A DNA stretch of 28,570 nucleotides from Vitrella brassicaformis CCMP3155 (lineage: Eukaryota > Protista > Chromerida): contig CDMY01000706.1 in the NCBI GenBank assembly GCA_001179505.1, positions 1 to 28,570 of the forward strand, in the 5' to 3' direction. The position numbers and the translations under genes are program-made. Positions 2,426-28,570 of this stretch are shown here, piece after piece; position 1 is the stretch's first letter; each line of letters begins with the position of its first letter. The notes beneath the pieces were generated by a model. It worked only from the letters and a program-made list of their open reading frames with translations. It was not told the DNA's origin and made no database searches.

Positions 2426-2999
2426 ACCGAGTCACACCACTGCAAGCACAAACAGAGATACACAGTCAATTGCAAATCCCTTCTCCATCCAACATTGCCG
2501 GCGCACCTGGTCAGTCAGTCACTCGACGGCCGCCACCGCGAAGCCATCGACGACACCTGCGGTGAGAACACACAGAGATGCCACCCCAGTCAGTGGTGCT
2601 TTGCCTTGCCGTCACACATCGTTGATTCGTTCATTCATTCTCATACCATCAGCGGGTGGATTGGCAGGCCAACCAGACTCCGAGAACAAAGGCTGCTTCT
2701 CCGTTTGCTTCTTCACCGAGGGCTCGACAGCTGACAACACACACGGCGAGCAGTGAGGTCACGCATGTTCGGTCTTTTCGCTTGTTACCTTCCTTACTGT
2801 GTCTGCTGACCTGGAACAACCTGCGAAAGAGCCGTTTTGCTTCACTTTTATCCCCCGATCGGCATCATTTGCGAGCTTGGCGCCACGAGTTCTCCCTGTG
2901 GCTTGTGAATGTCCACGGAGGGACGTGCTGACATCAAGATCAGCAGCTTGGCTTCACATGACCCATCTGCTGCTGCTGCTGGTGCATCCATAGCAACTC
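2426..2999. promoter_or_regulatory. Putative bidirectional promoter/5'UTRs between the ankyrin and F-box genes (twin at 26928-27544)
   Basis: Divergent gene starts at 2425 (-) and 3000 (+). The segment ~2690-2850 is visibly near-identical to ~27120-27285 in reverse. Confidence 0.5.
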
Positions 3000-5900
3000 A
3001 TGGAGGTAAGCGCCAACCACGACAGAACAAAAGAGAGAGGAGCAGCTATTTCAGATCTTTCGTTGGTTTGCAGATGTCTGGCGGTGCTGACGAGAATGCC
3101 GGCAAGCGGCCTCGTGTGGACAATATTGACTCATCGCCAGCTGCTGCTGCTGCTGGAGGTGGGAAGAGGGACCCATGAAGGGAACAGACCGACTCACTCT
3201 TTGATGGCCGGCTGCCTTTGTTGTGATGCTCTCTCTCTCTCTCTCTCTCTCTCAGGTGGTGGATGTAGCACTGGTGTAGCTGTAGATGGCGGGCAGCCCT
3301 CGGACCAAGGGGTGCATCCCGTCATAGACTGGGTCAGCAGCACAACCACCTGCATGGACGACACACGCAGACACACACACTTGATGGCTCTGTGTGTGTC
3401 CGTGTGTTCGTTCATTCCATCAGGCCGACAGGGCGAATGTCCGTCGGCTGGTCCCCTTGTTGAAGAAGATCAAATCGCTCGAGGTGCAGACGGCGACCGT
3501 GCTGTTAAAGGTGCGACCACTCGTCACTCCCACACTGGCCGACAAGGTACACACACACACACACACACGCCCTTCTCCTTCTGTTTGTGAGTGGTGATGT
3601 GTGTTGGCAGGTGCCCGGCCTGTCGAGTAAGCTGATGACGGTGGAGCAGTCGGTGGCGTTGCGACACGACACGCTGCGGGGTCTCATCAAGACACTCGAC
3701 AGCGTCAAAGTCGCCAAGCCGCCACTCCCTCACCCCATCGCCAACAAACCCCTCCCACCAGACACCACAATAACCCAGGCAAGCCACACATCAGACCAGC
3801 CCAAAGATCCTCACACATGACATGTGCGCCCCTGTGTGTGTGGTCAGCTCGGTCGTCCGTGTCTGGACGGCCTGCCGCCCGACGTGGCGCACGACGTGTT
3901 GGCCTTCATGCCCACCAAAGACGCCGCGCCCCTCTCCCGCGTCAACCAGGCCATCAAGCAGCCCGTCACCGACGACACCAGGGGCGTGTACCGCCATCTG
4001 GTCATTGGTGTGGACGAGCGAGAGTGGTGGGATGAGGGCATTCGGAGCAATGCCAGGCGGAAGCGCGAGGACCGGCAGAGACCTCGATACACTGAAGCAG
4101 AAACTGGTGTGCCAGCGCATTCCACCAGCCATCGAGCGGCCGGGGAGGGAGCATGTTCTGGTTCTTGGTCAGGGTCGGCTGCGGACGGTGCACATTAGCT
4201 CTCATTGGAAGGGCCTCGACTTCCCTCTCGACTGCATCGAGGCCTCCCGCGACACAGTGAGGAGCATGAAGCTCTACGAGAAGAGACTCGAGAACGACTA
4301 CGACCTCTCGGGCTTTGAGGATTACGACTACAGCGTGCCGACTTCACCGTCCACTGTGGCCTTCTCACAGCTGGAGGACCTCTACGTCGAACAGTGGCCA
4401 TATGATTACGGGTGAGCAGCGGGTGTCTGACGGTCACAGGCAGCTGTGATGTGTGTTTATCATCCCCTCTCTCTCCCTCTCTCTCTCACACACACTGTGT
4501 GTCTGTGTGTGTGTGTGTGTGCGTGTGTGTGTGTGTGTGTTCAGGCTGAGGCGTCGCCGTGGGTAAGCATCAGTGTTCTTCATGGTCACACAGCTGCTAT
4601 GCACTGATCATCCCCTCTCTCTCTCTGTGTGTGTGTGCGTGTGTGTTTGTTTAGGTTCCGAGGGTGGCGATTCCCATCGCTCCTTCGCCTGCGAGCTCGG
4701 GGGTCTTCTTGGGGGATGAGTGACATCATGGAGCATGCCCCCAAGCTCAAGTCACTGTGTAAGCAGTCACAGTTCTCACATGCAGCTGCTGCACCCATGG
4801 ATGACTTCTCTGACCCTCCCACCTGTCTGCAGCGATCGACTGCCTGTTTTTTGACTTCGATTCCCTCGTTCTGGGATGCCCGCACCTCACCGACATCGAG
4901 TTGGTGCAGGTGTGCCCCTATGAATTCACGTCGACACTGGGCAAGCTGAAGCGTGCTCTCGACCCCATCTGGACCAAAGATAGCCTAAAGGGTGCGCCAG
5001 CCACCGAGCGAGAACAGACAGAGGAGCCATCGACAGCGGGCTGGCCGCAATGTTCTTTGTGGCTGTGTGCAGACGTTGAGAAGAGGCTCGGCCTGGAGTT
5101 CGACGGCAGGATCTCCGTCCCCTTCACCGACCATCTGCTCCGCCCCACAGGCCGTGATCAGATCGGCCTCCCTGCCTTCCTCGACTGGGCAGGTAAGTCG
5201 GTACGACAAACCGACAAATGGACAAACAGGAGGATTGCAATGCTGTGCATCTCTGTTGAATGTGTGGGTTTGTCTGCAGCGTCGGTCAACTGCATGGTCG
5301 ACTGGAGGGCGAGTGAGGTTCGTGTCGACTGCTCCAGGGACCTCGTCACTTCCCCTCCTGCACCCACTGGCTTCATGACCAAACTGATCAAAGACATCAG
5401 CAGCACAGCCAAACACGTGAGCAACGCAGCACCAAGACTAGAGGCCGCAAAGAGACGCACATTCACCCCTGCTCCTTGTCTGCCACGGGTGTACGGTTGG
5501 ATACACGCAGGTGACTCTGCAGTGTGGCGGGAAGCCTCTGCACCCGTCGTGGGCCGGCCTGCTGGTCTTCACCAAGGCCACTTCTCTCACGGTGGCGGGC
5601 CTGACGTCATCCCGGGCGTTGTCGAGTGTGCCGCAGTGGATGGCAGCCAAGAGCGACACCACCGGTGGCAATCGCCACCTGCCCAACATCACCACCCTCC
5701 ACCTCGGCTTCGACGGGGGTGTGTGTGATGACGTGCCTGCGGGGCCCGATGGCCTTCGTGCGCTGTTGGGCATATTAGATAGGCTCACGACAGTCAGTCT
5801 GACCTGCTTGTCGAACATGGGCGTGGCAGCGTTTTGCCTATCGCAGCTGCCCCCCACTGCCAAGCTAGAGAGCGTCGACGTGGTGGCATTGGATTGCAGC

Positions 5901-6242
5901 TCAGATGTGCCCGCCATCTCTGCCTGCACCCGATACCCTCACATCGCTTCCATGACTGTCGAAGTGATCGTTAGCAAAACGATAGATGAGATTGCGTCTG
6001 GCGTCGCGTTGATCGCTGCTGTGCGGCCTGCAACCGCTCGTCTGAAAGCGTCTGTCGGTCTGAGTGCTCTGCACAATCGGGAGGGGTGTGAGAGCAGAGA
6101 GGCCGAGTTGCGTTCAGTGGTGGAGCATTGCATCGACCAGGCAGAGACAGCCCACTATGGGCTGGTTGCCGATGACAGCGAGTCGGGTGCGTATGTAGAG
6201 TATGTAGAGCTGCAGCTGGTGAGGCTGCCAACGCATTCCTGA
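3000..6242 (+). pseudogene. F-box/LRR-like multi-exon gene, left copy, frameshifted
   Basis: F-box motif LDGLPPDVAHDVLAFMPTKDAAPLSRVNQ in exon 3848-4106. That exon is 259 nt between two phase-0 junctions (28 nt at 4061-4088 replaces 357 nt of the right copy), giving TAG at 4196-4198. Downstream exons remain colinear with the right copy and end ...VRLPTHS* at 6242. Confidence 0.65.
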
Positions 6243-6811
6243 CATGTCTATGATGACTAGCTAGCTGTACAGAACATCGTGTCTAGCGGGGACGGCTGGC
6301 TGTCTGGCGTGTGGTGACTGGATGCTATGCGAGTTGGCTATTTCTGCACTCTGCCTTTCCTCGACCGATCAGTGTGTGGGTGACGTGTTGATGCATTCGA
6401 TCATACGTGGCTGCAGTGACACTGTTCGTGCTTATCGCTATCAAGCCTTCTCTGGCTGTCTGAGCAATGAGCATCCATATTGAAATCCATGAGCCCCGAC
6501 ATCCATTCATTCCTCCCGGCCGTTCCTTCTCTGCCGACACACACACCTTCATTCCTCCACGTGGTGTGTGGCACACTGTGTGTATGTCCGCTGTGTGGAG
6601 GCCATCGGTCAATTCCTCTCTTACAGCGGTTGAATGCACTGTGTGAAGGCATGAATCCTCTGGCAGTCTGTCTCTGTCGCTTCGATCAGTCCCTCGGTTG
6701 CCAGCGCACCACAATACCGCAGCTGTTAATGTCACGAGACGTCTGCACACACAAACGTCAGACAGACACACATCAAAGGCAGGGAGACACGTCCATTAAT
6801 TACATGGTTGC

Positions 6812-7886
6812 TTACATCCTGGTGGGATGATCTCTCCGTCGCTTCGGATCGGCCCCCTCAGCGCACAGGGCGGCCTCTCCGACCGATTCACACCTCGCTC
6901 CATCTTCTCTGCACACATCACAACAACAACACACACACACACGCGCGTCACGTGGCTGTCGGTCACTGGATCTCTCACCTTTGAGCTTGAGTGCCGTGAC
7001 AGCTCCTGGGTGATAGTGGTGGTGCAGCCGTCCGCTGCAGAACTGCACCCGGCCGAATGTGGTCGTCTCTTCGCTGGGCCGGAGGGTGAAGAACCGACAG
7101 TCTTCCAACTCGTCACTGGACATCACACATCACACACACAGGGAGAGACACTGACTCTATTGCTGCGCTGCCCTACCCACCAGTGGTTAGCGGCTGTGGT
7201 GGCGTTGATGTTGTCGTGTTGCTCGAGCGTCTCGCTGCACGCACTCAGCATGTTCGAGTAGACGTCGTAGTTGGCAACCAACAGCGGCTTGACATAAGTC
7301 GTGGCAAACCTTCAATGAGGAGACAGCGAGAGAGAGAGAGAGAGACACGTGCAGTGTGTCTCTGTGTGTCAGAAGGTCGTACGGCGATGTTTGTGTGGTC
7401 AGGGTTTGGAGCGTGCGCATCCACGTGTCATCGAGACACACACGTGCAGTCGGCCAGCTGAATGCCGTGCACTCAGTGGCCTTGTCGCACCACTCGCGCA
7501 TCTCATCGACGCCACTGATGCCCTGACGACACACACACAGACAGACAGACAGACAGACAGACAGATGGACAGACAATCGCGTGACTGATTGATTGATGTG
7601 GTGGAGAGGCTCACTGACTGACTGACCATTTCTGCCGGCAGGAGAGTGATTGACCGGCGACAGTCGACTGTGTGGTTGGCTATCTGCAGGTACTCGGCCA
7701 CACAGACGCCTCACCTGTGCCATCATCATGATTCACAGCCAGGAGAGACAGACGAGAGCGGGGCCCTTCCCTCTCTCTGTATTGATTCACTCACCTACCA
7801 TTGTGTTTGCGGCCGACATGGAGTGCATTGCAGCGGGCCAGCCACCACACCGTCAGAGACAGCACAAAGAGGAGCTTGACCGCCAT
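6812..7886 (-). pseudogene. Secreted PAN/apple-like protein gene, left copy, frameshifted (3' end uncertain)
   Basis: Signal-peptide exon MAVKLLFVLSLTVWWLARCNA starts at 7886. Exon 2 lacks 7 nt present in the right copy (TGGCCGAGTAC vs TGGCCGACCACCGAGTAC), giving TAG at 7680-7682. Confidence 0.6.
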
Positions 7887-8566
7887 CTTAGCTCTCCGAC
7901 CAATCGCTCTCCGATCGATGAAAAATTGATGAAGTCGGGTCCCACACACACACATGTAATGCACATGTATGGAGAGCATCCGACCCATTCATCGAGTAGC
8001 TTTTCACGCACAAAGAGAAGCTGTGTATATCAAAAACTCTAGTTGAGCAGCCCAAGGCTTGTGTTCGTGCCCGATAGATACACTGACCTAGTCTCTAGCA
8101 AACACAGCTCAACTTGGCCAGCAAACAGAGAGACACATCGACCACCGAACGCTCACTCACTGAATCAGTTCAAAGCGCCATCGGCGTTTCCCATGCTGAG
8201 GCCCTTGTAGTCCGACCCTGCGGCTTCACTGCATGGATGGCGCAGAAAGACCCAAGGAGATATGCAGACACTGATTGAGTACTGCTTGATCGGTGCACCT
8301 GTCCTCAACCGATGGAGAGACACTGTCAGCACGTGCAGCTGCGCTCTCTTGCGATCCTGCCCAGATCACAAAAAGATGAATTAGTGAATGATTCATTCCT
8401 CGCGCTTGGGTGGGTGTGCTGTACCTGATCCTGCGAGCGGCGACCCGAACCATGAAGCTGGCGAGAAGACCTTGGCATACCAGGGGCGTCTGCCGTTCTG
8501 GTCGGGTGGTGGTTGGCCTCCTGGGCCTCTTGGCATGCAACACGAACTGCCAAACCAAAGCCTCAT

Positions 8567-17005: not shown

Positions 17006-19032
17006 CTGCAGACACACCACACGCACACACAAATAGGGCGGAAGACAGGCCATGTGGCTGTGCATTATGCGTCTCTCTGTGCGGGCCGCGTGTTGATGGC
17101 TTGCCTTTGGTGGTGGGCAGCTGGGGTTCTGTTGGGCCCACTGGATGCCCTCCGTCATATTTTGGATAAACTTGCTGGCCTCGTCTTTCACCTGAACACA
17201 TTCACACACACATGTACAGTGGGTGGGTGTTTGGGCGCTGGTGGTGCCTCTGCTGTCTGTCTGTTTCGCTGACCGTTTTGCAGGAGTTCTGTTTGACCTT
17301 GAGGCACATGAGCCTCCAGAGGTCTGTGCTCTCCTGACACGACACACAGGGACATATTCACACGCAGAGGTGACTGACCATCTCCATCTTTGCGGGGGGA
17401 GAGTGTCGCCTTTCCTTCCCAGCTGACCTTGAGCAGCCTTTCCCAGTGGCCGAAGTGGATGTGCAGCGACATATATGAGTCTATTTGGTAGATCAGGCCC
17501 AACAGGTCATCTATGTCCTGCAGACAGACAGACAGACAGACAGACAGGCAGGCAGACAGATCGACTTGACGACCTCACAGACAGAGAGAATCACTACATG
17601 CCCACGTTGATGGCGAGTGCCCTTCGGATGGATCTCTCGAAGTCTTTCACCCGCGCGAGCATCTCGGTGGTGTCGGAGGCTTTTCGGATCTCTTCTGCCA
17701 GCCGGTCACACACAACCTGCTCATCCTTGGTGGCTGTGGCAGCTGGGGGATTGCCGTCAAAACTGATAACTGGGGACAAACAAGACACAGAAAGGAAGCG
17801 AGCACTGCAGGCCGTGTGTGGTGTTAGTTGTCAGTCTCTCTGTGTGTGTACCTTCCTGGGCGTCTTTGGGCTCGGCCGTCCTGAGGCTGTCGACCACGCG
17901 CATGAAGTCGGCGACAGTATCCCTCTGAAGGCGAGCCAGCTGCTGCTGCACCAACACGCCTTTGTCGATGGCCTTGCCCTTGCTCTGCAGCAGCGAAGCG
18001 AAAGGACACCAGACAGACACACCCGAAATCACGCGCATATGGATTGGCGCCTTGTCGCTGCCCATCCACCTTGAGTTTGGCCATGTCCTCGTCAATCTTG
18101 GCGTCCAGCAGCGCCGCCAAGTCCGTCCGCCGCTCCCACAGACACCACCGCACCCAATCGGCCACCCATTGCTCGCTCGGGGAGGGCACCAGATGACCAC
18201 CTGTCGCGTGGCGTGCAAATCGGGGCCACCGCACAGCCTCAATGGCGGCTTGGAAGAGGGGCGGGGAGGTGATGAAGGCCGTCAGCGGCTTGCTATACTC
18301 TGTAAATGTCCTGGCCACCGACGGGTAGAGGCAAGAGATCAGCACACTCGGGGGGCTCGAGAAGACGGGCACGCCATCGACCGTGTAGAGCTGCGAATGG
18401 TGCCGCTGGGCCCTGAAGAGCAGGTCAAAGGCCAGAAAACGCACCTTGAGCCCGGCCCGCTGCAGGTCGCGCACGGCCGCCCTGGCGAAAGGCAGCAGCA
18501 GCGGGTCTATATGGTCCGCCTTGCTAAAGGTGGGAAGGAAACGAAGCACCGGGCACTCAGAAACACCCGAGCTCCCTCCAAATGTCGCGTCGACCACGTA
18601 AGGACAGAAGTTGAAATATTCGCCCATCGGATCCTCTCGGATGCGGAGGTCAACCTCGCCAGGCTGCGGCTCACTCAACTCGACTGCTGCAGCTGCTGCA
18701 GTGGCGTCTCCAGCAGATGCATCCTTGGCGGCCACACCAGCCAGGCACTCTTCAATCGCCGCCCTCTCGCGCTCCACCTGACACGTGTAGAAATCGGCCA
18801 TGTCGAGGAAGCCGATGAACAGCCGCGCGACGTTGACATTGGTAAAGGCCGGCCTCACGATGGTGCGAAAGAGCTCACAGGGCTCCCGACGAGTGTCTTC
18901 ATCTTCACGAAGGCATCGTGTCGAGCAGTAGAGCATCTCGCCGGACAGGGGGCATGCGACTCGTCGGCCGAGCGACCCGCACTTGAGGCACTTGATGTCA
19001 GCAGTGGCATGAGTCATTGACGCGTCCGACAT
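16161..19032 (-). CDS. Degenerate MYND-like zinc finger + helical region + catalytically degenerate cyclophilin domain (start may be 19032, 19095 or 19224)
   Basis: Exon 1 has CLKC-x8-CPLS-x4-YCSTRC. Phase-consistent exons lead to RPKVFMDL...VVITLYTDVNPKAAENFRCYCTGEKGTGTAGYPLHYK, SESIYG, RFLIT and PIVVQHCGEL*, which are cyclophilin-fold hallmarks. Confidence 0.7.
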
Positions 19033-19222
19033 CGGTGGGAAGGCGGCGTCACGACCGATGTCAAGATGGGGCGCTTGTCGAGGGGAGAAGAGCATGGATC
19101 TGCATAGATGAGAATTCAGGTCCGCTGCCGGGCAATCGCACAGGCTGCCGGGCCGCCTCTTTCCCGGCTGCGAGCTGAGTAGTTGCAGCTGCAAGCTTAG
19201 CTCAGAGGGTGCGAAGGAAAAC

Positions 19223-20429
19223 ATGGCGAACCGCTGGCTCCCTGGCGAGAAGCTGAGCAGCACGGAAGTCGCTGCTTACCTCGAGAGGATCGGGATCTCA
19301 GTGGGTGAGGCAAAGGAGCCGTCCCCCGAGCTGCTGTTGCTGCTGCAGCGAAAGCACCTATCGTCAGTGCCCTTCGAGAACCTGCATATCATTCTCAGCG
19401 AAGACAATCACAAAGTGCCACAGCTGGAGCCTTTCGCGACGTTCAACAAAATCGTGACGCACAATCGTGGCGGATATTGTTACGAGCTGAATGGCGGATA
19501 TTGTCGCCTCCTGGACGCATTGGGCTTTCGCGTCAAGCCACTCTTGGGTCAGCCCATGCGCAGGCACACACATCCACCTCAAGGCACCCATCCTCTGCTT
19601 GCGCCTGTGTGTGTCGATGTGTGTCTGCATGTGCAGCGCGCATCAGTGGTGAGGACACGCCCTACCCAGCGATTGCACAATTGGACCACCTGGTGATTCT
19701 CGTGACCTTGGGGGAGAGCGAGTACATCACAGATGTGGGCAACGGGACCAAGTGCATCCGATCACCAATCCACCTCCCCACAGAGGGCACACCGACGGTG
19801 ATCCCCGGCCACCGGCTGTCGTGCATTGCCGAGGGGCTGTATCTTCTCGAGTGGATGTCGGAGGACAACACATGGACACCCTGGTGAGTGACGGACGAGC
19901 CACGAAGATGACGAGAAATAGGTTGATGGGGTCATTCAGTCACGCCTGTCTGTCTGGCTGGGCTATGTTCCTGTCAGGTACACTGTTGACCTCAAGCAGA
20001 ACACCTACATTCCCCAGGACACCGTGTGAGCGCTGACGGGGAAGAATGCACCCCACTCGGCCAATGCGCATTTCTTCCTCTCTCTCTGTCTGTCCACGTC
20101 TGAAGTTTTGCCAACTTCCATGTGGCCAACGTCCATCCGCTCTTCTCCCAGGTGCCGCTGGCCGTCCTTCACACAGCGTATGGCGCCAAGGTCATCACCA
20201 AGGGCAAGTACAAGCACACCCATTTCGCATGGACGGCACACGAGACCGGCGGCGGCTGGCCCCCTGTGGACGTGGACGTCCCTCCGGTGATGGATGGCAA
20301 GGCCTCCGTCGATTTCGGCCACCGCAGTCTGTCTTGTGAGGAGATCCCCGCTTTGCTGGTTGGTGAGTTCCGCTTCGACTATGGCTTCAGCAGCGAGCAG
20401 ATGGAGCGTCTGAGGAAGCATGTGAAGGG
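19223..20429 (+). other. nat: Arylamine N-acetyltransferase domain
   Basis: VPFENL, RGGYCYELN (catalytic Cys), DHLVILV (His) and ITDVGNG (Asp) form the complete NAT triad. Confidence 0.9.
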
Positions 20430-21796
20430 GTATGCACTCGAGTGATGGAACAGCGGACCCAAAAATTGTGTGTGTGTGTGTGTGTGTGTGTTGGAATACC
20501 CCTCGTGCAGGGGAGCGGACTCGACGCTGAAGAGCACACAGCCGTCGCCGGACGAGCTGGCGATCAAGGAGACGGTGCGTGACTGCTACAGCAAAGTGTG
20601 TCGCGAGTTCAACCCTGCCAAGCAAGAACAGGCCGACCAGCTAGCGCAGAGCTTCGGCTATTCCAAGCAGGACGTCCACGAGCTGGGTGCGGGTGCCTCG
20701 ATGGGCCTCTCGTGCGGCAACCCCGTCAGCAGGGTGGGTGAGTCGGCAGGCAGTCAACGAAAGACCTACTCACTCTGTCCTGCGGGCGGATTGATGGATG
20801 GATGCATCAAGGGATGTGTGTGTTCTGGCTGTGTGTATTCAGGCTGACCTGAGAGAGGGCGAGGTGGTGTTGGACCTCGGCGCTGGAGCTGGATTCGACC
20901 TCTTTCTGGCCGCCAAGAGGGTCAGCCGGGCAAATGAAAACGAACTTTGGGTGCAACGGGTGTGATTGTCCTGATGTGACTGCAATAATGTGACTATTTC
21001 AGGTGGGCCCCAGCGGCCGGCTGATCGGCGTTGACTACAGCGCTGACATGGTCGAGCGGGCGAGGGCCAACGCCAAGAAAAGGGGCATTGCCAATGTCGA
21101 CTTCCACCACGCCGAGCTGGAGAGGCTGCCGATCGCTGACCGATCCGTGGACTGCGTCATCTCCAACTGTGTGCTCAATCTGGTGCCTGACAAGACAAAG
21201 GCATTCAGCGAGCTCTTCAGGGTGCTCAAATCAGGTCGGTCGGTGGCTGGCTGGTGGGGCAGGGAGCACTCAGGCCACACACGCACGTGTATGCTGTCTG
21301 TCTGTCTGTCTGTTTGTCTTTGTGTGCGCACGGCATGCAGGTGGTCGTGTGGTGATATCTGACATCGTCCTCAGGCAAAAGGTCCCTCCTGGCCTCGCTG
21401 CGGTCAGTGAGCGCCGACGCACACACGCACACACACACACGAAATGGTGTGCATGTGTATGTGTCATGTCTGCAGGACATCCGCACGCGTGTGTGCTGTG
21501 TGGGTGGCGCCCTGCAAGCAGAGGAGTACGAGTCGCTTTTGCGTCAAGTGGGCTTCGGCGAGGTCAGATTGGTGGACAAGAACGCTGACCTGAATGTGTG
21601 GAAGAAGCTCGACGTCCTGCCGAAGCAGCAGCAGCAGCAGCAGGAGGGCAGCTGCTGCTCGACCAGCCGGTCAGAAGCAACGAGAGTGAGCTGCTGCGGT
21701 GCTGAGCAAAGCGATAGTGAGGCCGGGTCTGCTTTCATGACGAGCGACCTGAACCAGTTCGCCTCGAGCTGCTACATCCACGCCCTCAAGCCGTAG
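19223..21796 (+). CDS. arsM: Arylamine N-acetyltransferase - arsenite S-adenosylmethionine methyltransferase fusion (9 exons, 619 aa)
   Basis: Exons 19223-19547, 19637-19883, 19978-20025, 20106-20429, 20511-20733, 20843-20920, 21003-21234, 21341-21402 and 21476-21796 sum to 1860 nt. All introns are GT-AG and phase-consistent. Confidence 0.75.
20511..21796 (+). other. arsM: As(III) methyltransferase (ArsM/AS3MT) domain
   Basis: MGLSCGNP, GEVVLDLGAGAGFD (SAM-binding motif), IGVDYSADM, SVDCVISNCVLNLVPDK, RVLKSGGRVVISDIV and CCVGGALQAEEY...GF carry the conserved ArsM cysteines. Confidence 0.9.
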
Positions 21797-21996
21797 ATAG
21801 ACGACTGACGAGAGAGTAGACGACTGTCGCGGGGGACGAGCTGTAGGCGGCTGGCTTTTTCTGTCCATTGATCGATGACACGCTTCATGTGTAGTCCTCT
21901 TTTTTTATCATCGACTCCATACGCACATATATATACATGTGTGTGAGTGACCCGACTTCATCAATTTTTCATCGCGCGATGATCAGTGCAGCTAAG

Positions 21997-23054
21997 ATGG
22001 CTATCAAGCTCCTCTTTGTGCTGTCTCTGTCGGTGTGGTGGCTGGCCCGCTGCAATGCACTCCACGTCGGCCGCAAACACAGAGGTAGGTAACTGAGTGA
22101 TGGAGAGAGAGGGAAGGGCCCCACTCTCGTCTGTGTCTCCTGGCTGCGAATCATGACGATGACACAGGTGAGGTGTCTGTGTGGCCGACCACCGAGTACC
22201 TGCACATAGCCAACCACACAGTCGACTGCCGCCGGTCAATCACTCTCCTGCCGGCAGAAATGGTAAGTCAGTCAGTGAGCCTCTCCACCACATCAATCAA
22301 TCAGTCACTCCATTGTCTGTCTGTCTGTCTGTCTGTCTGTGTGTGTCGTCAGGGCATCAGTGGCGTCGATGAGATGCGCGAGTGGTGCGACAAGGCCACT
22401 GAGTGCACGGCATTCAGCTGGCCGACTGCACGTGTGTGTCTCGATGACACGTGGATGCGCACACTGCACACCCTGACCACACAAACATCGCCGTACGACC
22501 TTCCGACACACAGACACACACACTGCACGTGTCTCTCTCTCGCTGTCTCCTCATTGAAGGTTTCCCACGACTTATGTCAAGCCGCTGTCGGTTGCCAACT
22601 ACGACGTCTACTCGAACATGCTGAGTGCGTGCAGCGAGACGCTCGAGCAACACGACAACATCAACGCCACCACAGCCGCATACCACTGGTGGGTAGGGCA
22701 GCGCAGCAATAGAGTTGGGCTCTCCCCCTGTCTGTGTGGTGTGTGATGTCCAGTGACGAGTTGGAAGACTGTCGGTTCTTCACCCTCCGGCCCAGCGAAG
22801 AGACGACCACATTCGGCCAAGTGCAGTTCTGCAGCGGACGGCTGCACCACCACTATCACCCAGGAGCTGTCACGGCACTCAAGCTCAAAGGTGAGAGATC
22901 CAGTGACCGACAGCCACGTGACGCGTGTGTGTGTGTTGTTGTTGGGATGTGCGCAGAGAAGATGGAGCGAGGTGTGAATCGGTCGGAGAGGCCGCCCTGT
23001 GCGCTGAGGGGGCCGATCCGAAGCGACCGGGGAGATCATCCCACCAGGATGTAA
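21997..23054 (+). CDS. Secreted cysteine-containing protein with two PAN/apple-like motifs (3' end uncertain, may extend toward ~23460)
   Basis: Signal peptide MAIKLLFVLSLSVWWLARCNA. Spliced exons give WCDKATECTAFSWPTARVCL and YHCDELEDCRFFTL...QFC (C-x5-C-x2-F...C). Confidence 0.5.
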
Positions 23055-23540
23055 GCAGCCATGTAATTAATGGACGTGTCTCCCTCCCTTTGATGTGTGT
23101 CTGTGTAACATTTGTGTGTGCAGACGCCTCGTGACGTTCGCTGATCAGTCTTGAGATTTGCTGGCAATCGAAGGACTGATCAAAGCGACAGACACAGACT
23201 GTCAGTGCATTCATGCCTTCACACGATGCATTCAACCGCTGTAAGAGAGAGATTGATTGATGGCCTCCACAGCGGACACACACACATCACATACACACAC
23301 ACCACAGGACGTGGGTGTGGGTGTGTCGGCAGAGTGGGAATGGACGGGAGGGATGAATGGATTGGCTTCTTTCTTTCAATATGGATGCTCATTGCTCAGA
23401 CATCCAGAGAATGGTTGATAGCTACAAGCACGAACAGTGTCACTGCAGCCACGTACGTATGATCGAATGCATCAACACGTCAACCACACACATTGAGAGG
23501 CAGAGCATCATCCAGCCCCCACACGCCACGCATAGACATG

Positions 23541-26500
23541 TCATGAATGCGTTGGCAGCCTCACCAGCTGCAGCTCTACATCTGACCACTCTACGTCGAA
23601 GCCGCCACCCGACTCGCTGTCGTCAGCGATCAGGCCATAGTGGGCTTTCTCTGCCTGATGGATGCACTGCTCGACTACTGAATGGAATGCGGCCTCTCTG
23701 CCATCGCCCTTTTCCAAATTGTGCAGAGCACTCAGGTCGACAAACGCTACCAGCCGAGCGGCTGCAGGCCGCACGGCAGCGATCAACGCAACGCCAGACG
23801 CAACCTCATCTATCGTTTCGCTAACAATCACTTCGACAGTCATGGAGGCGATGTGAGGGTATCGGGCGCAGTCAGAGATGGCGGGCACCTCTGAACCACA
23901 CACCGATGCCCTCACCTCGACGCTCTCTAGCTTGACGTCAGGGGGCAGCTGCGATAGGCAAAACGCTGCCACGCCCAGGCTCGGCAAACGTGTCAAACTG
24001 ACTGTCGTGAGCCTGTCTAAGGTGCCCAGCAATGTGCCCGGGCCATCGAGCCCCGCAGGCACGCCGTCACACACACCCAGATCGAGAACGAGGCTGGTGA
24101 TGTTGGGCAGGTGGCGATTGCCACTGGTGGTGTCGCTCCTCGCGGCCATCCACTGCGGCACACTCGACAAGGCCCGGGATGACGTCAGCCCCTCCACCGA
24201 TACCTTGTTGGCCTTGGTGAAGACCAGCAGGCCGGCCCATGACTGGTCCAGAGGCCTCCCGCCACACCGCAGAGTCACCTGCACCAAAGCATGCAGACAA
24301 TGAGCAGGGGTGTATGTGCGTCTCTGTACGGCCTCTTGTCTCGGTGCTGCGTTGCTCACCTCTTTCGCTGTGCTGCTGATGTCTTTGATCATTTTGGCGA
24401 TGGGGCCAGTGGGTGCAGGAGGAGAAGTGACGAGGTCCCTGGAGCAGTCGATAGCCACCTCATCGACCCTCCAGTCAACCGTGCAGTTGGCCAACGCTGC
24501 AGACAGACAGACCCACACACAACAGAGATGCGTAGCATTGCAATCCTCCCGTCTGTCCATTTGTCGGTTCGTCCTACTAACTTACCTGCCCAGTCGAGGA
24601 AGGCAGGGAGGCTTATAGCATCAGGGTCTGTGGGATGGAGCAGCTCATGGGTGAAGGGAACGGAGATCTTGTCACCGAACTCCAGGCCGATCCTCTTCTC
24701 AACATCTGCACACAGCCACAAAAACAATGCGGCCAGCCTGTCGGTGGTTCCTCTGTCTGTTCTCGCTCGGTGGCTGGCGCACCTTTCAGGCTATCCTTGG
24801 TCCAGATGGGGTCGAGAGCACGCTTCAGCTTGCCCAGTGTCGACGTGAAGTCGTAGAGGCCGTCCATCTTAACCCACTCGATGTCGGTGAGGTGCGGGCA
24901 TCCCTGAATGAGGGAGGCGAAGTCATCGTCATCCTCATCGTCAGCAAACAGCTCCTCGATCGCTGCAGACAAGGGAGAGGGACAGAGAACTCATCCATCG
25001 ATGCAGCAGGTGCATGTGAGAGGTATGATTGCTTACACAGTGACTTGAGCTTGGGGGCATGCTCCACGATGTCACTGACACCATGACCACCGTAGCTTCG
25101 GTTCCCCGCACGCAGGCGAAGAAGAGATGGGAATCGCCACCCTCGAAACCTAAACACACACACACACACACACAGAGGGGATGATCAAGACACAGCTGCG
25201 GTGTGACCATGAAGAACAGTCATGCTTACCCACGGTGATCTGGCCAGTCTTCGACGTAGAGCTCCTCCAGCTGTGAGAAGGTCACAGTGGGCGGCGATGT
25301 CGAGACGCTGTAGTGGTAATTCTCGAAGCCCGGGGTGTAGTCGAGCTTCATGCTCCTCACTGTGTCGCGGGAGGCCTCGATGCACTCGAGAGGGAAGTCG
25401 AGGCCCTTCCAGTGACTGCTGATGTGCACCGTCCGCAGCCGACCCTGCCACCAGACAGACAGGAGTCAGCTATGGTCTCGACTTGGTTGGTGCGGTGTGG
25501 TGGCGCACCAGTTTCTGCTTCAGTGTTTTGAGGGTGTCTTGCTCTCTCAGCCGCTTGCTCTGCTGTCTGAGGTCCGCCCCGCCCGCCGCCCCCTCCCCGG
25601 CCGAGTCGTCCCCTCCCCCCTCCTCATCGTCTCCCTCCCCTCCCTCCCTTTCTTCATCCTCCTCTCCCTGGTCGTCGTCGTCGTCTTCTTCTTCTGCTTC
25701 ATCATCATCATCATCATCCTCCTCCTCACTGCTGCCGTCGCCATCGACGCTCAGGCTCTCGCCCGTTTGCCAGGCGGTCCTCCGAATGCCGCCTGAGGGC
25801 CGCGCCGCCGCCACCCCCTTCCCCTCCCCTCCAGAGCTCCCCCGGCTACTGCCGTCGCCATGGACGCCGATGTCCTCGAACGTCCGTCTGGCGTTCCTCC
25901 GAATGCCCGCATCCCACCACTGTCGCTCGTCCACACCAATGACCAAGTGGCGGTACACGCCCCTGGTGTCGTCGGTGACGAGCTGCTTCATGGCCTGGTT
26001 GACGCGGGAGAGGGGCGCGGCGTCTTTGGTGGGCAGGAAGGCCAACACGATGTGCGCCACGTCGGGCGGCAGGCCGTCCAGACATGGACGACCGAGCTGA
26101 TCACACACACAGGGGCGCACATGTCATGTTGTGTGGATGTTTGGGCTGATTTGGTGTGGCTTGCCTGGGTTATTATGGTGTCTGGTGGGAGGGGTCTGTT
26201 GGCGATGGGCTGAGGGAGTGGCGGCTTGGCGACTTTGACGCTGTCGAGTGTCTTGATGAGACCCCGCAGCGCGTCGTGTCGCGACGCCACCGACTGCTCC
26301 ACCGTCAGCAGCTTGTTTGACAGGGCCGGCACCTGCCAACACACACACACACTCACAGACAGAAGGAGAAGGGCGTCTGTGTGTGTGTGTGTGTACCTTG
26401 TCGGCCAGTGTGGGCGTGACGTACGGTCGCATCTCTGACAGCACGGTCGCCGTCTGCGCCTCGAGCGATTTGATCTTCTTCAACAAGGGCACCAGCCGAC

Positions 26501-26927
26501 AAACATTCGCCTTGTCAGCCTGAGAGAATGAACACACACACGGGCACACACAGAGCCATCAAGTGTGTCTGCGTGTGTCGTCCAGGCAGGTGGCTGTGCT
26601 GCTGACCCAGTCTATGACGGGATGCACCTCTTGGTCCGACGGCTGGCCGCCATCTACAGCTACACCAGTGCTACATCCTCCACCTGCATGACGAGAGAGC
26701 ATCACACAACAAAGGCAGCAGGCCATCAAAGAGTGAGTCGGTCTGTTCCCTTCATGGATCCTTCTTCTCACCTCCAGATCCAGCAGCGGGCGATGAGTCG
26801 TCAAGGTCCACACGAGGCCGCTTGCCGGCATTCTCGTCAGCTCCGCCACACACCTGCAAACCAACAGAAGATCTGAGTCAGCTGCTCCTCTCTCTCTTGT
26901 TCTGTCGTGGTTGGCACCTACCTCCAT
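23541..26927 (-). CDS. F-box/LRR-like multi-exon protein with an acidic insertion, right (apparently intact) copy
   Basis: First exon is ATGGAG (26922-26927). F-box motif LDGLPPDVAHIVLAFLPTKDAAPLSRVNQ, a D/E tract, LRR-like segments (LIQGCPHLTDIEW, HLPNITSLVL, LDRLTTVSLTRL), stop at 23541. The junctions checked were phase-consistent. Confidence 0.65.
25560..25740 (-). repeat. Trinucleotide-derived low-complexity tract encoding poly-D/E/G
   Basis: TCA/TCG/TCC/TCT runs on the + strand encode SSEEEDDDDDDEAEEEDDDDDQGEEDEEREGGEGDDEEGGG. Confidence 0.85.
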
Positions 26928-27544
26928 GAGTTGCTACGGATGTACCAGCAGATGGGTCATCTCCGCCTCAGCGACAAGCCGGGCCGGGCGGCCGCGCTCG
27001 TGAGGCTTGATCTTGATGACAGCACGTCCCTCTCCTTAGACGCGGACACTGACAACTCCAACACAACTCTGTTGTCACTCATTTTGGCGCCAAGCTCGCA
27101 AATGGTGCCGATCGGGAGGGAAAAAAGTGGAGCGAAACGGCTCTTTCGCAGGTTGTTCCAGGTCAGCAGACACAGTAAGGAAGGAAACAAACGAAAAGAC
27201 CGAACATGCGTGGCCTCTTTGCCTGCCGTGTGTGTTGTCAGCTGTCGAGCCCTCGGTGAAGAAGCAAACGGAGAAGTAGCCTTTGTTCTTGGAGTCTGGG
27301 GCCTGCTGATGCTCCTGCTGACGGTATGAGGAATGAACGAAGGAATCAACAAACCAGCAAAGCACCACTGGCCGGGGTGGCATCTCTGTGTGTTCTCACT
27401 GCAGATGTCGTTGGTGGGGTCGCTGTGACGGCCGCCGACTGACTGACTGACTGACTGACCAGGTGCGCCGGCAATGTTGGATGGAGGAGGGATTCGCAAG
27501 TGACTGTGCGTGTCTGTGTGTATGCAGTGGTGTGACTCATTGGG

Positions 27545-28570
27545 ATGGCCCAACCATCCTCTGCCGCATCGCAAGCACCTCCTCATGCTACGCTGCCACA
27601 CGGCTGCAAGGGGCTGGATGACGTCGACATCGTCCCTGGTAGGAGCGTGAGTGCTGTCAGTCAGCAGCTGCTGCAGGGCTGCATTCGCCGAACCTTCACC
27701 GAGGCAGGATCCGTCACACAGCTGATCCGTCAAGGAGCCGACCCGAGAGCCATCGGCAACCTTCGTGTCCGCGGCCCCACAGTCACCCCGTACTGGCGAT
27801 ACAACTGCCCGTCTTTCGCCATCGACAGTCCAACAAACTACCCGCTCCTCTATGCGGACGGCGAGGATGGCTACGATGTGCGCGTCTCCCTGCCACAGTG
27901 GTCCTCCCGTGAGCTGCAGCAGGACATCATCAATGCACTCATCGACGGCGGGGCGGACGTCAATAGGGGCGGCGGGTCTGAGAGTCCCATCAAGGTGGCA
28001 ATTGCGGCAGGCAATCTGACGGCAGTGGATGCCCTCCTGGCGCGTCAGGTCGACGTGCGGGGATTCACGGTGATGCGGCTTCCATACATCCACGATGCTG
28101 CCCCTCCCGCCACTCGTGAGTACGAGGCCGCCCTCATGTCGGTGTACCGCCGACTTGTCCAACACGACAACACACTCGCAGCCCAGCGGACCGCTCATGG
28201 ATTCAATCTGGTGCATTTGGCCGCCGAGGCCCCCTCCATCTTCTCCCAGTCCTTCATCGACCAGTACCTCACCCTCATCACCAGCCACGGAGCCGACATG
28301 ACGGCAACAGACACCGGCTGGACGCCACTGCACATCGCAGCATGGCGTGGCTCCCCCTATGTGGCCGAGTGGCTGTGCCGCCGGCTCCCAGCTGAGGACA
28401 TCAACAGAGGAAGGCCCCCCCAGCCTCATCGGACACCCCTCGCTATGGCTGCCGATCGTTTCGACTTTTTTGCGCGACAGCAACAGGAGCGGCAACAGAC
28501 AGAGGGGGGCTCGAGACACATCCGCCAGCAGAAGGCCACCATCGGTGTGCTGCTGCGGAGCGGGGCGGCC
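27545..28570 (+). CDS. Ankyrin-repeat protein, right copy (truncated by the window end)
   Basis: ATG at 27545 with an in-frame TGA upstream. Open for 342 codons to the window end: MAQPSSAASQAPPHATLPHGCKGLDDVDIVP...GADMTATDTGWTPLHIAAWRGSPYVAEWL. It is absent from the ORF track, probably because no stop falls inside the window. Confidence 0.85.
   Translation, partial: MAQPSSAASQAPPHATLPHGCKGLDDVDIVPGRSVSAVSQQLLQGCIRRTFTEAGSVTQLIRQGADPRAIGNLRVRGPTVTPYWRYNCPSFAIDSPTNYPLLYADGEDGYDVRVSLPQWSSRELQQDIINALIDGGADVNRGGGSESPIKVAIAAGNLTAVDALLARQVDVRGFTVMRLPYIHDAAPPATREYEAALMSVYRRLVQHDNTLAAQRTAHGFNLVHLAAEAPSIFSQSFIDQYLTLITSHGADMTATDTGWTPLHIAAWRGSPYVAEWLCRRLPAEDINRGRPPQPHRTPLAMAADRFDFFARQQQERQQTEGGSRHIRQQKATIGVLLRSGAA

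What the first reader, a model, noticed from the sequence alone, without database searches (positions are those of the whole stretch)
19223..21796. NAT-ArsM fusion: candidate single-chain detoxifier of amino-aromatic arsenicals
Seen in sequence: the NAT frame ends ...RKHVK GG|GTATGC (phase 2). After an 81-nt GT-microsatellite intron ending GTGCAG, the next exon starts in phase 2 and reads GADSTLK...ETVRDCYSK into a complete ArsM. The ArsM exon has no in-frame ATG before MGLSCGNP. Both domains keep their catalytic residues. Established: NAT/NhoA-type enzymes N-acetylate arylamines, including aminohydroxyphenylarsonate derived from roxarsone in bacteria. ArsM methylates As(III) and aromatic arsenicals. 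Bacterial ars clusters pair arsM with GNAT-type ArsN acetyltransferases, a different fold. Inference: this is a eukaryotic two-step acetylate-plus-methylate enzyme for organoarsenicals, or an organoarsenical biosynthesis/self-protection enzyme. I do not recognise this architecture as described.
Basis: partly seen in the sequence, partly recalled or inferred. Interest (0 to 1): 0.85.

Follow-up and report, generated by a model that had tools for sequence, protein, structure and literature searches.

The report
Expressed NAT–ArsM fusion gene, Vitrella
The alga Vitrella brassicaformis makes one spliced mRNA that joins an arylamine N-acetyltransferase to a bacterial-type arsenic methyltransferase in a single 619-residue protein, a domain pairing I found nowhere else; that the two halves work on the same arsenic compound is not shown.

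Summary
A 9-exon GT-AG model (19223-21796, + strand) gives one 619-codon frame. Transcript contigs from four public runs (three studies) carry all splices I could score, including the 81-nt 20430-20510 intron, inside single contigs. Three contigs are full length and equal UTRs plus the 1860-nt CDS exactly.

The protein is already public (CEM30750.1 / A0A0G4GL81, named only "Methyltransferase domain-containing protein"). I found no paper on it.

- **NAT half:** it keeps Cys86-His126-Asp141 and models as a full NAT fold.
- **ArsM half:** it is 42-51% identical to ArsR-linked marine bacterial ArsMs. It keeps three of the four canonical cysteines and both C-terminal CC pairs. The first canonical Cys is missing, as in its whole bacterial clade.

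No other NAT+ArsM protein turned up in the searches of about 1.8 and 5.8 billion proteins. None of 160 prokaryotic NAT loci has an arsM nearby. Bacterial ArsN2(GNAT)-ArsM fusions do exist and are a fold-level analogue.

The fusion is real.

The scan has not reported this fusion on other DNA.

The parts
19185..19222 (+). 5' UTR (longest transcript contig starts at 19185; the others start at 19208 and 19216)
   Evidence: records 8, 10, 2, 3
19223..19547 (+). Exon 1: NAT N-terminal domain, residues 1-108 plus 1 nt. Catalytic Cys86 codon at 19478-19480
19637..19883 (+). Exon 2: NAT beta-barrel domain. His126 codon at 19687-19689, Asp141 codon at 19732-19734
19978..20025 (+). Exon 3 (48 nt), NAT
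   Evidence: joints 19882/19977 and 20025/20106
20106..20429 (+). Exon 4: NAT C-terminal (third) domain. It has a lineage-specific, low-confidence insert of about 25 residues (residues ~250-275) and ends at ...RKHVKG
20430..20510 (+). Intron 4, the fusion junction: 81 nt, GTATGC...GTGCAG, (GT)n run, in-frame TGA at 20443-20445. Spliced out in all four runs
20511..20733 (+). Exon 5: 14-residue S/T/P-rich linker (residues 316-329) and ArsM N-terminal region. Cys383 (GLSCGNP) codon at 20713-20715. Lineage-specific Cys340 and Cys345
20843..20920 (+). Exon 6: SAM-binding motif I (VLDLGAGAGFD)
21003..21234 (+). Exon 7: methyltransferase core. Cys471 (ISNCVLNL) codon at 21168-21170
21341..21402 (+). 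Exon 8 (62 nt). It is not listed as a separate piece by read laying, but the contigs hold exactly the 64 letters expected between the neighbouring pieces
21476..21796 (+). Exon 9: Cys521 (CVGGAL) codon at 21497-21499, C-terminal CC pairs 573/574 and 586/587, TAG stop at 21794-21796
21797..21979 (+). 3' UTR (contigs end at 21876-21979)

Best explanation
This is one nuclear gene of Vitrella brassicaformis with nine exons. In the data available it is constitutively spliced. It encodes a 619-residue, probably cytosolic, two-enzyme protein.

**NAT half (residues 1 to about 315).** It is a complete arylamine N-acetyltransferase fold. By family knowledge it should take the acetyl group of acetyl-CoA onto Cys86, activated by His126 and Asp141, and pass it to an amine.

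**Linker (residues 316-329).** A flexible S/T/P-rich stretch, encoded just after the 81-nt intron.

**ArsM half (residues about 330-619).** It is a complete bacterial-type ArsM. By family knowledge it should bind a trivalent arsenical between Cys471 and Cys521, with Cys383 assisting, and methylate it from SAM. It lacks the first canonical cysteine, as do its closest bacterial relatives. In CmArsM that cysteine is needed for As(III) but not for MAs(III) (PMC6138428). The domain may therefore prefer already-organic trivalent arsenicals, or use another cysteine.

**Likely origin.** Two once-separate genes, both bacterial-like, were joined when the spacer holding the NAT stop codon became an intron.

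**What is shown.** The gene structure, the splice, the single mRNA, the domain identities and the conserved catalytic residues.

**What is inferred.** Both activities, the cytosolic location and the origin.

My reading is that two conjugation-type detoxification activities are tethered and co-expressed. Coupling on one substrate is possible but not shown.
For: - **Splice and single mRNA:**. Four runs from three studies carry the joint. Three full-length contigs equal UTRs plus CDS.
- **Gene model:** it equals public protein P0001 = CEM30750.1.
- **NAT half:**
  - Pfam PF00797 at 116.8 bits.
  - C86, H126 and D141 are invariant in a 66-sequence alignment and align to the triad of solved NATs.
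  - AF2 gives pLDDT 86 and pTM 0.89.
  - Foldseek returns 40 NAT-family chains at E <= 2e-12, with target TM 0.68-0.88.
- **ArsM half:**
  - PDB ArsMs 5evj and 4fr0 match at E 1e-26 to 1e-25.
  - NF008823 scores 259.8 bits.
  - It is 42-51% identical over 94-98% of its length to about 290-residue bacterial ArsMs.
  - C383, C471, C521 and both CC pairs are conserved in 59-71 of 71 homologues.
  - The Atlas structure match gives TM 0.85-0.92 by target.
  - The closest homologues sit directly behind ArsR-type regulators.
- **No N-terminal extension:** the NAT aligns from residue ~14 with bacterial N-termini.
- **No support for coupling:** no arsM within reach of 160 NAT loci.
Against: - No enzyme activity has been measured for either half.
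- The ArsM half misses the first canonical cysteine and falls 3 bits under the NCBIfam cut-off.
- Most partners seen fused to bacterial ArsM are domain families with known arsenic roles (ArsD, LMW phosphatase-type reductase, ArsN2). By analogy a fused NAT may well be arsenic-linked rather than independent.
- Assembled contigs drop rare isoforms, so a minor intron-retaining mRNA encoding NAT alone is not excluded.
- The protein has not been seen at the protein level.
Confidence: 0.55

Rival explanations
1. Coupled pathway enzyme. The NAT half N-acetylates a natural amine-bearing organoarsenical, and the ArsM half methylates the arsenic of the same molecule. Candidate substrates are an arsinothricin-like amino acid, an amino-arsenosugar or an adenosyl-arsenical intermediate. 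This would be a fold-level replacement of bacterial ArsN, serving biosynthesis or self-protection.
For: - Bacterial ArsN2(GNAT)-ArsM fusions exist in the same domain order. P0178 scores 125.4 bits for ArsN2 against a cut-off of 125.
- Several other ArsM fusion partners belong to domain families with known arsenic roles.
- ArsN1 acetylates arsinothricin (PMC6465285).
- The missing first cysteine fits a preference for organic trivalent substrates (PMC6138428).
- Earlier notes say Vitrella carries arsenosugar-pathway genes (s1-215897, not checked here).
Against: - NAT-family enzymes are known for aromatic amines and hydrazines, not alpha-amino acids.
- No arsM lies near 160 prokaryotic NAT loci.
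- The closest NATs are not in ars operons.
- No such arsenical is known from chromerids.
- The fusion is seen in a single species.
Confidence: 0.22
2. One reading: a detoxifier of synthetic amino-aromatic arsenicals. It would acetylate the ring amine of reduced roxarsone or arsanilic acid and methylate the arsenic.
For: - The chemistry is real in animals with separate enzymes. [quoted passage not shown]
- CmArsM methylates PhAs(III) and Rox(III) (PMC6138428).
Against: - These compounds have been in use only since the 1940s and are mostly terrestrial (PMC6138428).
- The gene has eight spliceosomal introns and each half is only 33-51% identical to any relative, so it is ancient.
- Vitrella is a marine reef alga (my own knowledge).
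- I found no natural aromatic arsenical in the literature searches.
Confidence: 0.06
3. A neutral or partly dead fusion. One half, most likely the divergent NAT, no longer catalyses anything. It would serve only as a scaffold or regulatory module, or the ArsM-type half would methylate a non-arsenic substrate.
For: - The NAT half has no relative closer than about 45% identity. Only one hit falls below 1e-30, and that is the protein itself.
- It carries a low-confidence insert of about 25 residues.
- The genome is rich in unusual fusions (notes).
Against: - All 12 invariant columns of the NAT alignment, triad included, are kept.
- The fold is predicted with high confidence.
- The ArsM cysteines and CC tails are kept.
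- The gene is expressed in four runs.
Confidence: 0.12
4. Two products from one locus. Regulated retention of intron 4 yields a stand-alone 320-residue NAT (...HVKGYALE stop) beside the fusion.
For: The intron is 81 nt, a multiple of three, and carries an in-frame TGA 14 nt in. The NAT would end at a natural position.
Against: No contig covers the intron in any of the four runs. However, contigs drop rare variants.
Confidence: 0.05

Closest known systems
Bacterial ArsN2-ArsM fusion proteins (e.g. P0178, 484 aa; P0189, ArsM-ArsN2-like-CMD)
   Same: An acetyl-CoA-type N-acetyltransferase is fused to a PRK11873-type ArsM. In P0178 the domain order is the same, with the acetyltransferase N-terminal.
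   Different: The acetyltransferase is a GNAT fold of about 130 residues, not the Cys-His-Asp NAT fold. These proteins are prokaryotic and intronless. The substrate of ArsN2 is itself unknown (PMC6465285 studies ArsN1 only).
ArsR-linked marine bacterial ArsM of about 290-300 residues (P0326, P0333; Planctomycetota/Acidobacteriota-type)
   Same: They are 42-51% identical over the whole ArsM half. They share the three-cysteine pattern, the same two C-terminal CC pairs, and the lack of the first canonical cysteine.
   Different: They are stand-alone proteins in arsR-arsM operons with no NAT. Vitrella adds Cys340 and Cys345, where the homologues have K/R and Ala.
Solved algal ArsMs: CmArsM (4fr0/4kw7) and Chlamydomonas ArsM (5evj)
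   Same: They share the fold and the SAM motif. Cys72/174/224 correspond to Cys383/471/521. CmArsM methylates aromatic trivalent arsenicals (PMC6138428).
   Different: They score only about 92-96 bits, against 284 bits for bacterial relatives. CmArsM Cys44 aligns with Asp in Vitrella.
Bacterial arylamine N-acetyltransferases (P. aeruginosa 1w4t, S. typhimurium 1e2t, mycobacterial NATs)
   Same: They share the three-domain fold, the Cys-His-Asp triad and the PFENL and RGGYCxELN motifs.
   Different: Identity is 22-26% in the structural alignments and 33-45% to the best metagenomic NATs. The protein is not an NhoA equivalog (85 bits against 493). It has an extra loop of about 25 residues and a C-terminal ArsM.
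Other eukaryotic ArsM fusions, e.g. ArsM-SelD in Naegleria gruberi
   Same: A horizontally acquired arsM is fused to a second enzyme in a protist (PMC5552862).
   Different: The partner is selenophosphate synthetase, not an acetyltransferase.

Membership tests
Arylamine N-acetyltransferase (Pfam PF00797) | Profile match above the gathering score | tested here: met
   116.8 bits against 22.8, residues 38-245
Arylamine N-acetyltransferase (Pfam PF00797) | Cys-His-Asp catalytic triad | tested here: met
   C86, H126 and D141 are invariant in 66 sequences and aligned to the triad motifs of 1w4t, 1e2t and 4bgf
Arylamine N-acetyltransferase (Pfam PF00797) | Three-domain NAT fold, including the C-terminal lid | tested here: met
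   AF2 pLDDT 86 and pTM 0.89. Foldseek top 40 hits are all NAT family, target TM 0.68-0.88
Arylamine N-acetyltransferase (Pfam PF00797) | Acetyl-CoA-dependent acetylation of an arylamine or hydrazine | not testable with these tools
   Needs an enzyme assay
NhoA (NCBIfam NF011621 equivalog) | Score above the equivalog cut-off | tested here: not met
   85.1 bits against 493
ArsM / AS3MT arsenite methyltransferase | NCBIfam NF008823 score above the cut-off | tested here: inconclusive
   259.8 bits against 263. It is the best family by far, matching profile positions 6-233 of 272
ArsM / AS3MT arsenite methyltransferase | Class I SAM-binding motifs | tested here: met
   Methyltransf_31 at 123.5 bits, residues 393-534. 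VLDLGAGAGFD motif
ArsM / AS3MT arsenite methyltransferase | Cysteines equivalent to CmArsM Cys72, Cys174 and Cys224 | tested here: met
   C383, C471 and C521 align and are 71/71 conserved
ArsM / AS3MT arsenite methyltransferase | First conserved cysteine (CmArsM Cys44), required for As(III) but not MAs(III) methylation (PMC6138428) | tested here: not met
   It aligns with Asp. It is also absent in the 71 closest bacterial homologues. Cys340 and Cys345 lie nearby but are not homologous
ArsM / AS3MT arsenite methyltransferase | SAM-dependent methylation of trivalent arsenicals | not testable with these tools
   Needs an assay
ArsN-ArsM type acetyltransferase-methyltransferase fusion | GNAT-fold ArsN domain | tested here: not met
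   No GNAT family hit in P0001. The N-terminal half is NAT fold. This is an analogue, not a member

The most novel reading that the evidence does not exclude
The NAT half is a fold-level stand-in for bacterial ArsN. It would acetylate an amine on a natural, still undescribed marine organoarsenical, and the ArsM half would methylate the arsenic of that compound. The fusion would then mark a eukaryotic organoarsenical biosynthesis or self-resistance pathway, and would give the NAT family its first arsenic-linked physiological substrate.
Probability: 0.2. Interest if true: 0.8.

Novelty: new variant of a known kind. Interest (0 to 1): 0.5.

Why it matters
Both enzyme families are well known, but I did not find their union in one chain anywhere else. 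Bacteria independently fuse a different acetyltransferase fold (ArsN2) to ArsM. A second, unrelated acetyltransferase fused to ArsM in a eukaryote hints that N-acetylation and arsenic methylation may be linked more generally than is known. It also gives arsenic biochemists a ready-made, expressed construct to test for amine-bearing arsenical substrates. If the halves prove independent, it is simply one more lineage-specific fusion in a fusion-rich alga. The gene model is already public, so the new part is the reading, not the sequence.

Tried and rejected
- **First call for sequencing runs** failed because the machine was busy. The repeat worked.
- **Joint alignment** of P0001 with NAT-only and ArsM-only sequences (A1) stacked the two families on each other. 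I dropped it and modelled the NAT half alone (A2). I predicted no full-length structure, because no sequences bridge the two halves to inform domain packing.
- **Search for other NAT+ArsM proteins:**
  - In the profile-free scan of 1.84 billion representatives with exon 1, the only long hits besides the protein itself are NAT-NAT tandems.
  - The full-length word search listed 120 of 272 hits, and none but the protein itself carries PF00797.
  - The NAT-half and ArsM-half searches found none.
  - The ESM Atlas found none.
- **Bacterial operon origin or link:**
  - The contexts of the two closest NATs hold no ars genes.
  - Two of the closest ArsMs sit in arsR-arsM operons without a NAT.
  - 80 genome loci and 80 metagenome NAT loci (1.39 + 0.39 Mb) hold no ArsM. 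The only matches were generic methyltransferase cores of 45-68 bits.
- **Close relatives of the NAT half in JGI metagenomes** by exact peptide patterns: none.
- **Arsenic genes elsewhere in the window:** only ankyrin and F-box hits among the ten longest ORFs.
- **Literature:** no paper joins NAT and ArsM, or Vitrella and arsenic.
- **Phylogeny for gene transfer:** I did not build a tree. I could not fetch eukaryotic ArsM or NAT sequences as usable ids, so a tree would have held no eukaryotic comparators.
Full report
**1. The observation**

Reading 18900-22100 and assembling candidate exons gives a nine-exon model on the + strand: 19223-19547, 19637-19883, 19978-20025, 20106-20429, 20511-20733, 20843-20920, 21003-21234, 21341-21402 and 21476-21796. 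All eight introns are GT-AG and 73-109 nt long. The spliced CDS is 1860 nt, or 619 codons plus TAG.

The sequence reads ...AAG GG|GTATGC at 20429/20430 and GTGCAG|G at 20510/20511. The intron is 81 nt with a (GT)n run, and codon 315 is split 2+1. If the intron stayed in, a TGA at 20443-20445 would end the frame. No in-frame ATG lies between that TGA and the Met of SMGLSCGNP. The ATG at 19223 is the first start codon of any kind after an upstream stop.

**2. Is the splice real?**

Nine public runs hold the stretch. I laid four of them with exon-like word shares, from three studies, on 18700-22400. Every run shows the joint 20428/20510 ('skips 81, GT..AG'), along with the joints of introns 1, 2, 3, 5 and 6.

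In X1, X7 and X8 a single contig runs from just upstream of the ATG (19216, 19185, 19208) to beyond the stop (21885, 21979, 21906). Their lengths of 1956, 2081 and 1985 nt equal 5'UTR + 1860 + 3'UTR to the base. So exons 3 and 8, which are too short to be listed as pieces, and introns 7 and 8 are as modelled.

In X2 a 405-nt contig bridges the junction with 197 and 208 letters on the two sides. The depth bin 20436-20559 has 40% of the contig depth in all four runs. That is the share of its 50 exonic bases, so no contig covers the intron.

A splice that joins the two halves in frame cannot come from merging the transcripts of two neighbouring genes. One caveat remains: contigs drop rare isoforms, so minor intron retention is not excluded.

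**3. Identity and public status**

A scan of 1.84 billion representatives with exon 1 returned a 619-residue protein, P0001, at 100% identity. It is letter-for-letter my spliced model.

It is CEM30750.1 / UniProt A0A0G4GL81 / EukProt EP00390_P018835 of Vitrella brassicaformis CCMP3155. It is named only 'unnamed protein product' or 'Methyltransferase domain-containing protein', and it is the sole member of its 90% cluster. The window is the whole 28,570-base scaffold. So the sequence and model are public. I found no paper that discusses them.

**4. The NAT half (residues 1 to about 315)**

- Pfam Acetyltransf_2 scores 116.8 bits.
- In a 66-sequence alignment, C86, H126 and D141 are invariant, as are R22, E52, K76, G83, G84, E88 and N90.
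- HMMER alignments to solved NATs place these residues on the catalytic motifs.
- AlphaFold2 with that alignment gives pLDDT 86 and pTM 0.89. Only a loop of about 25 residues (~250-275) has low confidence.
- Foldseek returns 40 NAT-family chains, with target TM-scores of 0.68-0.88.
- The alignment starts at residue ~14 against bacterial N-termini, so there is no targeting extension.
- The NAT ends where bacterial NATs end. The last helix is 303-314.
- The nearest relatives are bacterial, at 33-45% identity. Only the protein itself scores below 1e-30.
- It is not an NhoA equivalog (85 bits against 493).

**5. The ArsM half (residues about 330-619)**

- The best NCBIfam family is arsenite methyltransferase NF008823, at 259.8 bits. 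This is 3 bits under the curated cut-off.
- PDB ArsMs from Chlamydomonas and Cyanidioschyzon match at E 1e-26 to 1e-25.
- Bacterial ArsMs of about 290-300 residues match at up to 284 bits, with 42-51% identity over 94-98% of the domain.
- Two of the closest, from marine metagenomes, sit directly behind an ArsR-type HTH_5 regulator.
- In an alignment with 71 homologues, C383 (GLSCGNP), C471 (SNCV) and C521 (C-GGA) are conserved in 71/71. C466 is conserved in 70/71. The C-terminal CC pairs 573/574 and 586/587 are conserved in 59-70 of 71.
- The first canonical cysteine (CmArsM Cys44) aligns with Asp. It is absent from all 71 homologues as well.
- In CmArsM that cysteine and Cys72 are needed for As(III) but not for MAs(III) (PMC6138428). 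A preference for organic trivalent arsenicals is therefore possible. This is inference only.
- Vitrella alone has Cys340 and Cys345, where the homologues have K/R and Ala.
- The bacterial N-termini align at residues ~320-330. The intron therefore sits exactly at the domain boundary, followed by a 14-residue S/T/P-rich linker.

**6. Is the architecture found elsewhere?**

Among the 150 closest NAT representatives, the only other long proteins checked are NAT-NAT tandems. A full-length search restricted to 340-1083 residues listed 120 of 272 hits. Only P0001 itself carries PF00797. The Atlas gives only ArsM clusters.

None of 80 species-representative genome loci or 80 metagenome loci around the most similar NATs holds an ArsM. 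Only generic methyltransferase cores of 45-68 bits matched. Exact-peptide patterns of the NAT half found no relative in JGI metagenomes.

These searches have limits: word prefilters, top-N lists, and few eukaryotic data outside NCBI and EukProt. Within those limits the fusion is unique to Vitrella.

**7. What bacteria do instead**

The same full-length search shows ArsM fused to ArsD, LMW-phosphatase-type reductase, AhpD/CMD, rhodanese, HTH and GNAT domains.

- P0178 is ArsN2 followed by ArsM. Its ArsN2 score is 125.4 bits against a cut-off of 125.
- P0189 is ArsM, then an ArsN2-like domain, then CMD.

So acetyltransferase-ArsM fusion is a known theme with a different fold. ArsN1 acetylates arsinothricin, and ArsN2 is uncharacterised in that paper (PMC6465285). 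A protist ArsM-SelD fusion is also on record (PMC5552862).

**8. How it most likely works**

*Shown:*
- one mRNA and one open frame;
- two complete domains with catalytic residues in place.

*Inferred from family knowledge:*
- The NAT half runs a ping-pong acetyl transfer through acetyl-Cys86.
- The ArsM half binds a trivalent arsenical at Cys471/Cys521, with Cys383 assisting, and methylates it from SAM.
- Arsenic methylation is a plausible need for a marine alga, since arsenate enters with phosphate.
- Earlier notes of this scan report arsenosugar-pathway genes in this genome (s1-215897, s1-221676). I did not check them.

*Coupling on one substrate:*
- I put the coupled, natural amine-arsenical reading at about 0.2. 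It rests on the ArsN2-ArsM analogy and on the arsenic-related nature of ArsM's usual fusion partners.
Those compounds date from the 1940s and are largely terrestrial (PMC6138428), whereas the gene is old and marine. The chemistry itself is real with separate enzymes in chickens (PMC5573966).

*Origin.* The NAT would end naturally eight residues after the donor site if the intron were kept, and the ArsM homology starts just after the acceptor. The simplest origin is that two adjacent genes were joined when the spacer became an intron. The lack of NAT-arsM adjacency in prokaryotes argues against joint transfer of an operon.

**9. Verdict**

The specific function is unsupported. The result is a new domain combination of two known enzyme families, seen in one species, from an already public but undiscussed gene model.

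Noticed in passing
window 1781-7893 and 21990-28192: A large, diverged inverted repeat, seen as 24 collinear segments at 81-97% complementarity, encloses about 14 kb. The NAT-ArsM gene lies at the inner edge of the right arm. The stop codon is at 21796, the longest 3' UTR ends at 21979, and the arm starts at ~21990. The divergence argues for a real old duplication rather than an assembly artefact. Note s1-235909 already flags it.
   Followed up: partly
window 18700-19185: The upstream neighbour lies on the minus strand, within ORF 17824-19263. Its transcript contigs end at 19143-19170, only ~15-40 nt from the 5' end of the NAT-ArsM mRNA at 19185. This looks like a head-to-head pair with a very short shared promoter region. 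The neighbour has no Pfam hit.
   Followed up: no
window 20584-20601 (residues 340 and 345): Vitrella-specific cysteines sit in the ArsM N-terminal helix, where 71 bacterial homologues have K/R and, in 70 of 71, Ala. They might stand in for the missing first catalytic cysteine.
   Followed up: no
L005 1783-6035, L006 1748-6000, L007 6950-8968: In marine metagenome contigs the closest bacterial arsR-arsM pairs are followed directly by one or two large FGE-sulfatase-domain (PF03781) genes. This is a conserved three-gene arrangement, and I do not know its meaning.
   Followed up: no
P0151, P0152, P0153; P0002, P0004, P0042: Tandem ArsM-ArsM proteins (449-585 aa) are the highest-scoring ArsM hits. 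Tandem NAT-NAT proteins (545-648 aa) are among the closest NAT hits. Both families therefore also occur as internal duplications.
   Followed up: partly
window 21998 onward (+ strand): The next gene downstream starts with a signal-peptide-like sequence (MAIKLLFVLSLSVWWLARCNA). It lies inside the right repeat arm, so it should have a twin on the left arm near 7880 on the minus strand.
   Followed up: no
window 701-2425 (-) and 25470-26120 (-): The only Pfam hits among the ten longest other ORFs are ankyrin repeats and an F-box. No arsenic-related gene was seen among them.
   Followed up: partly
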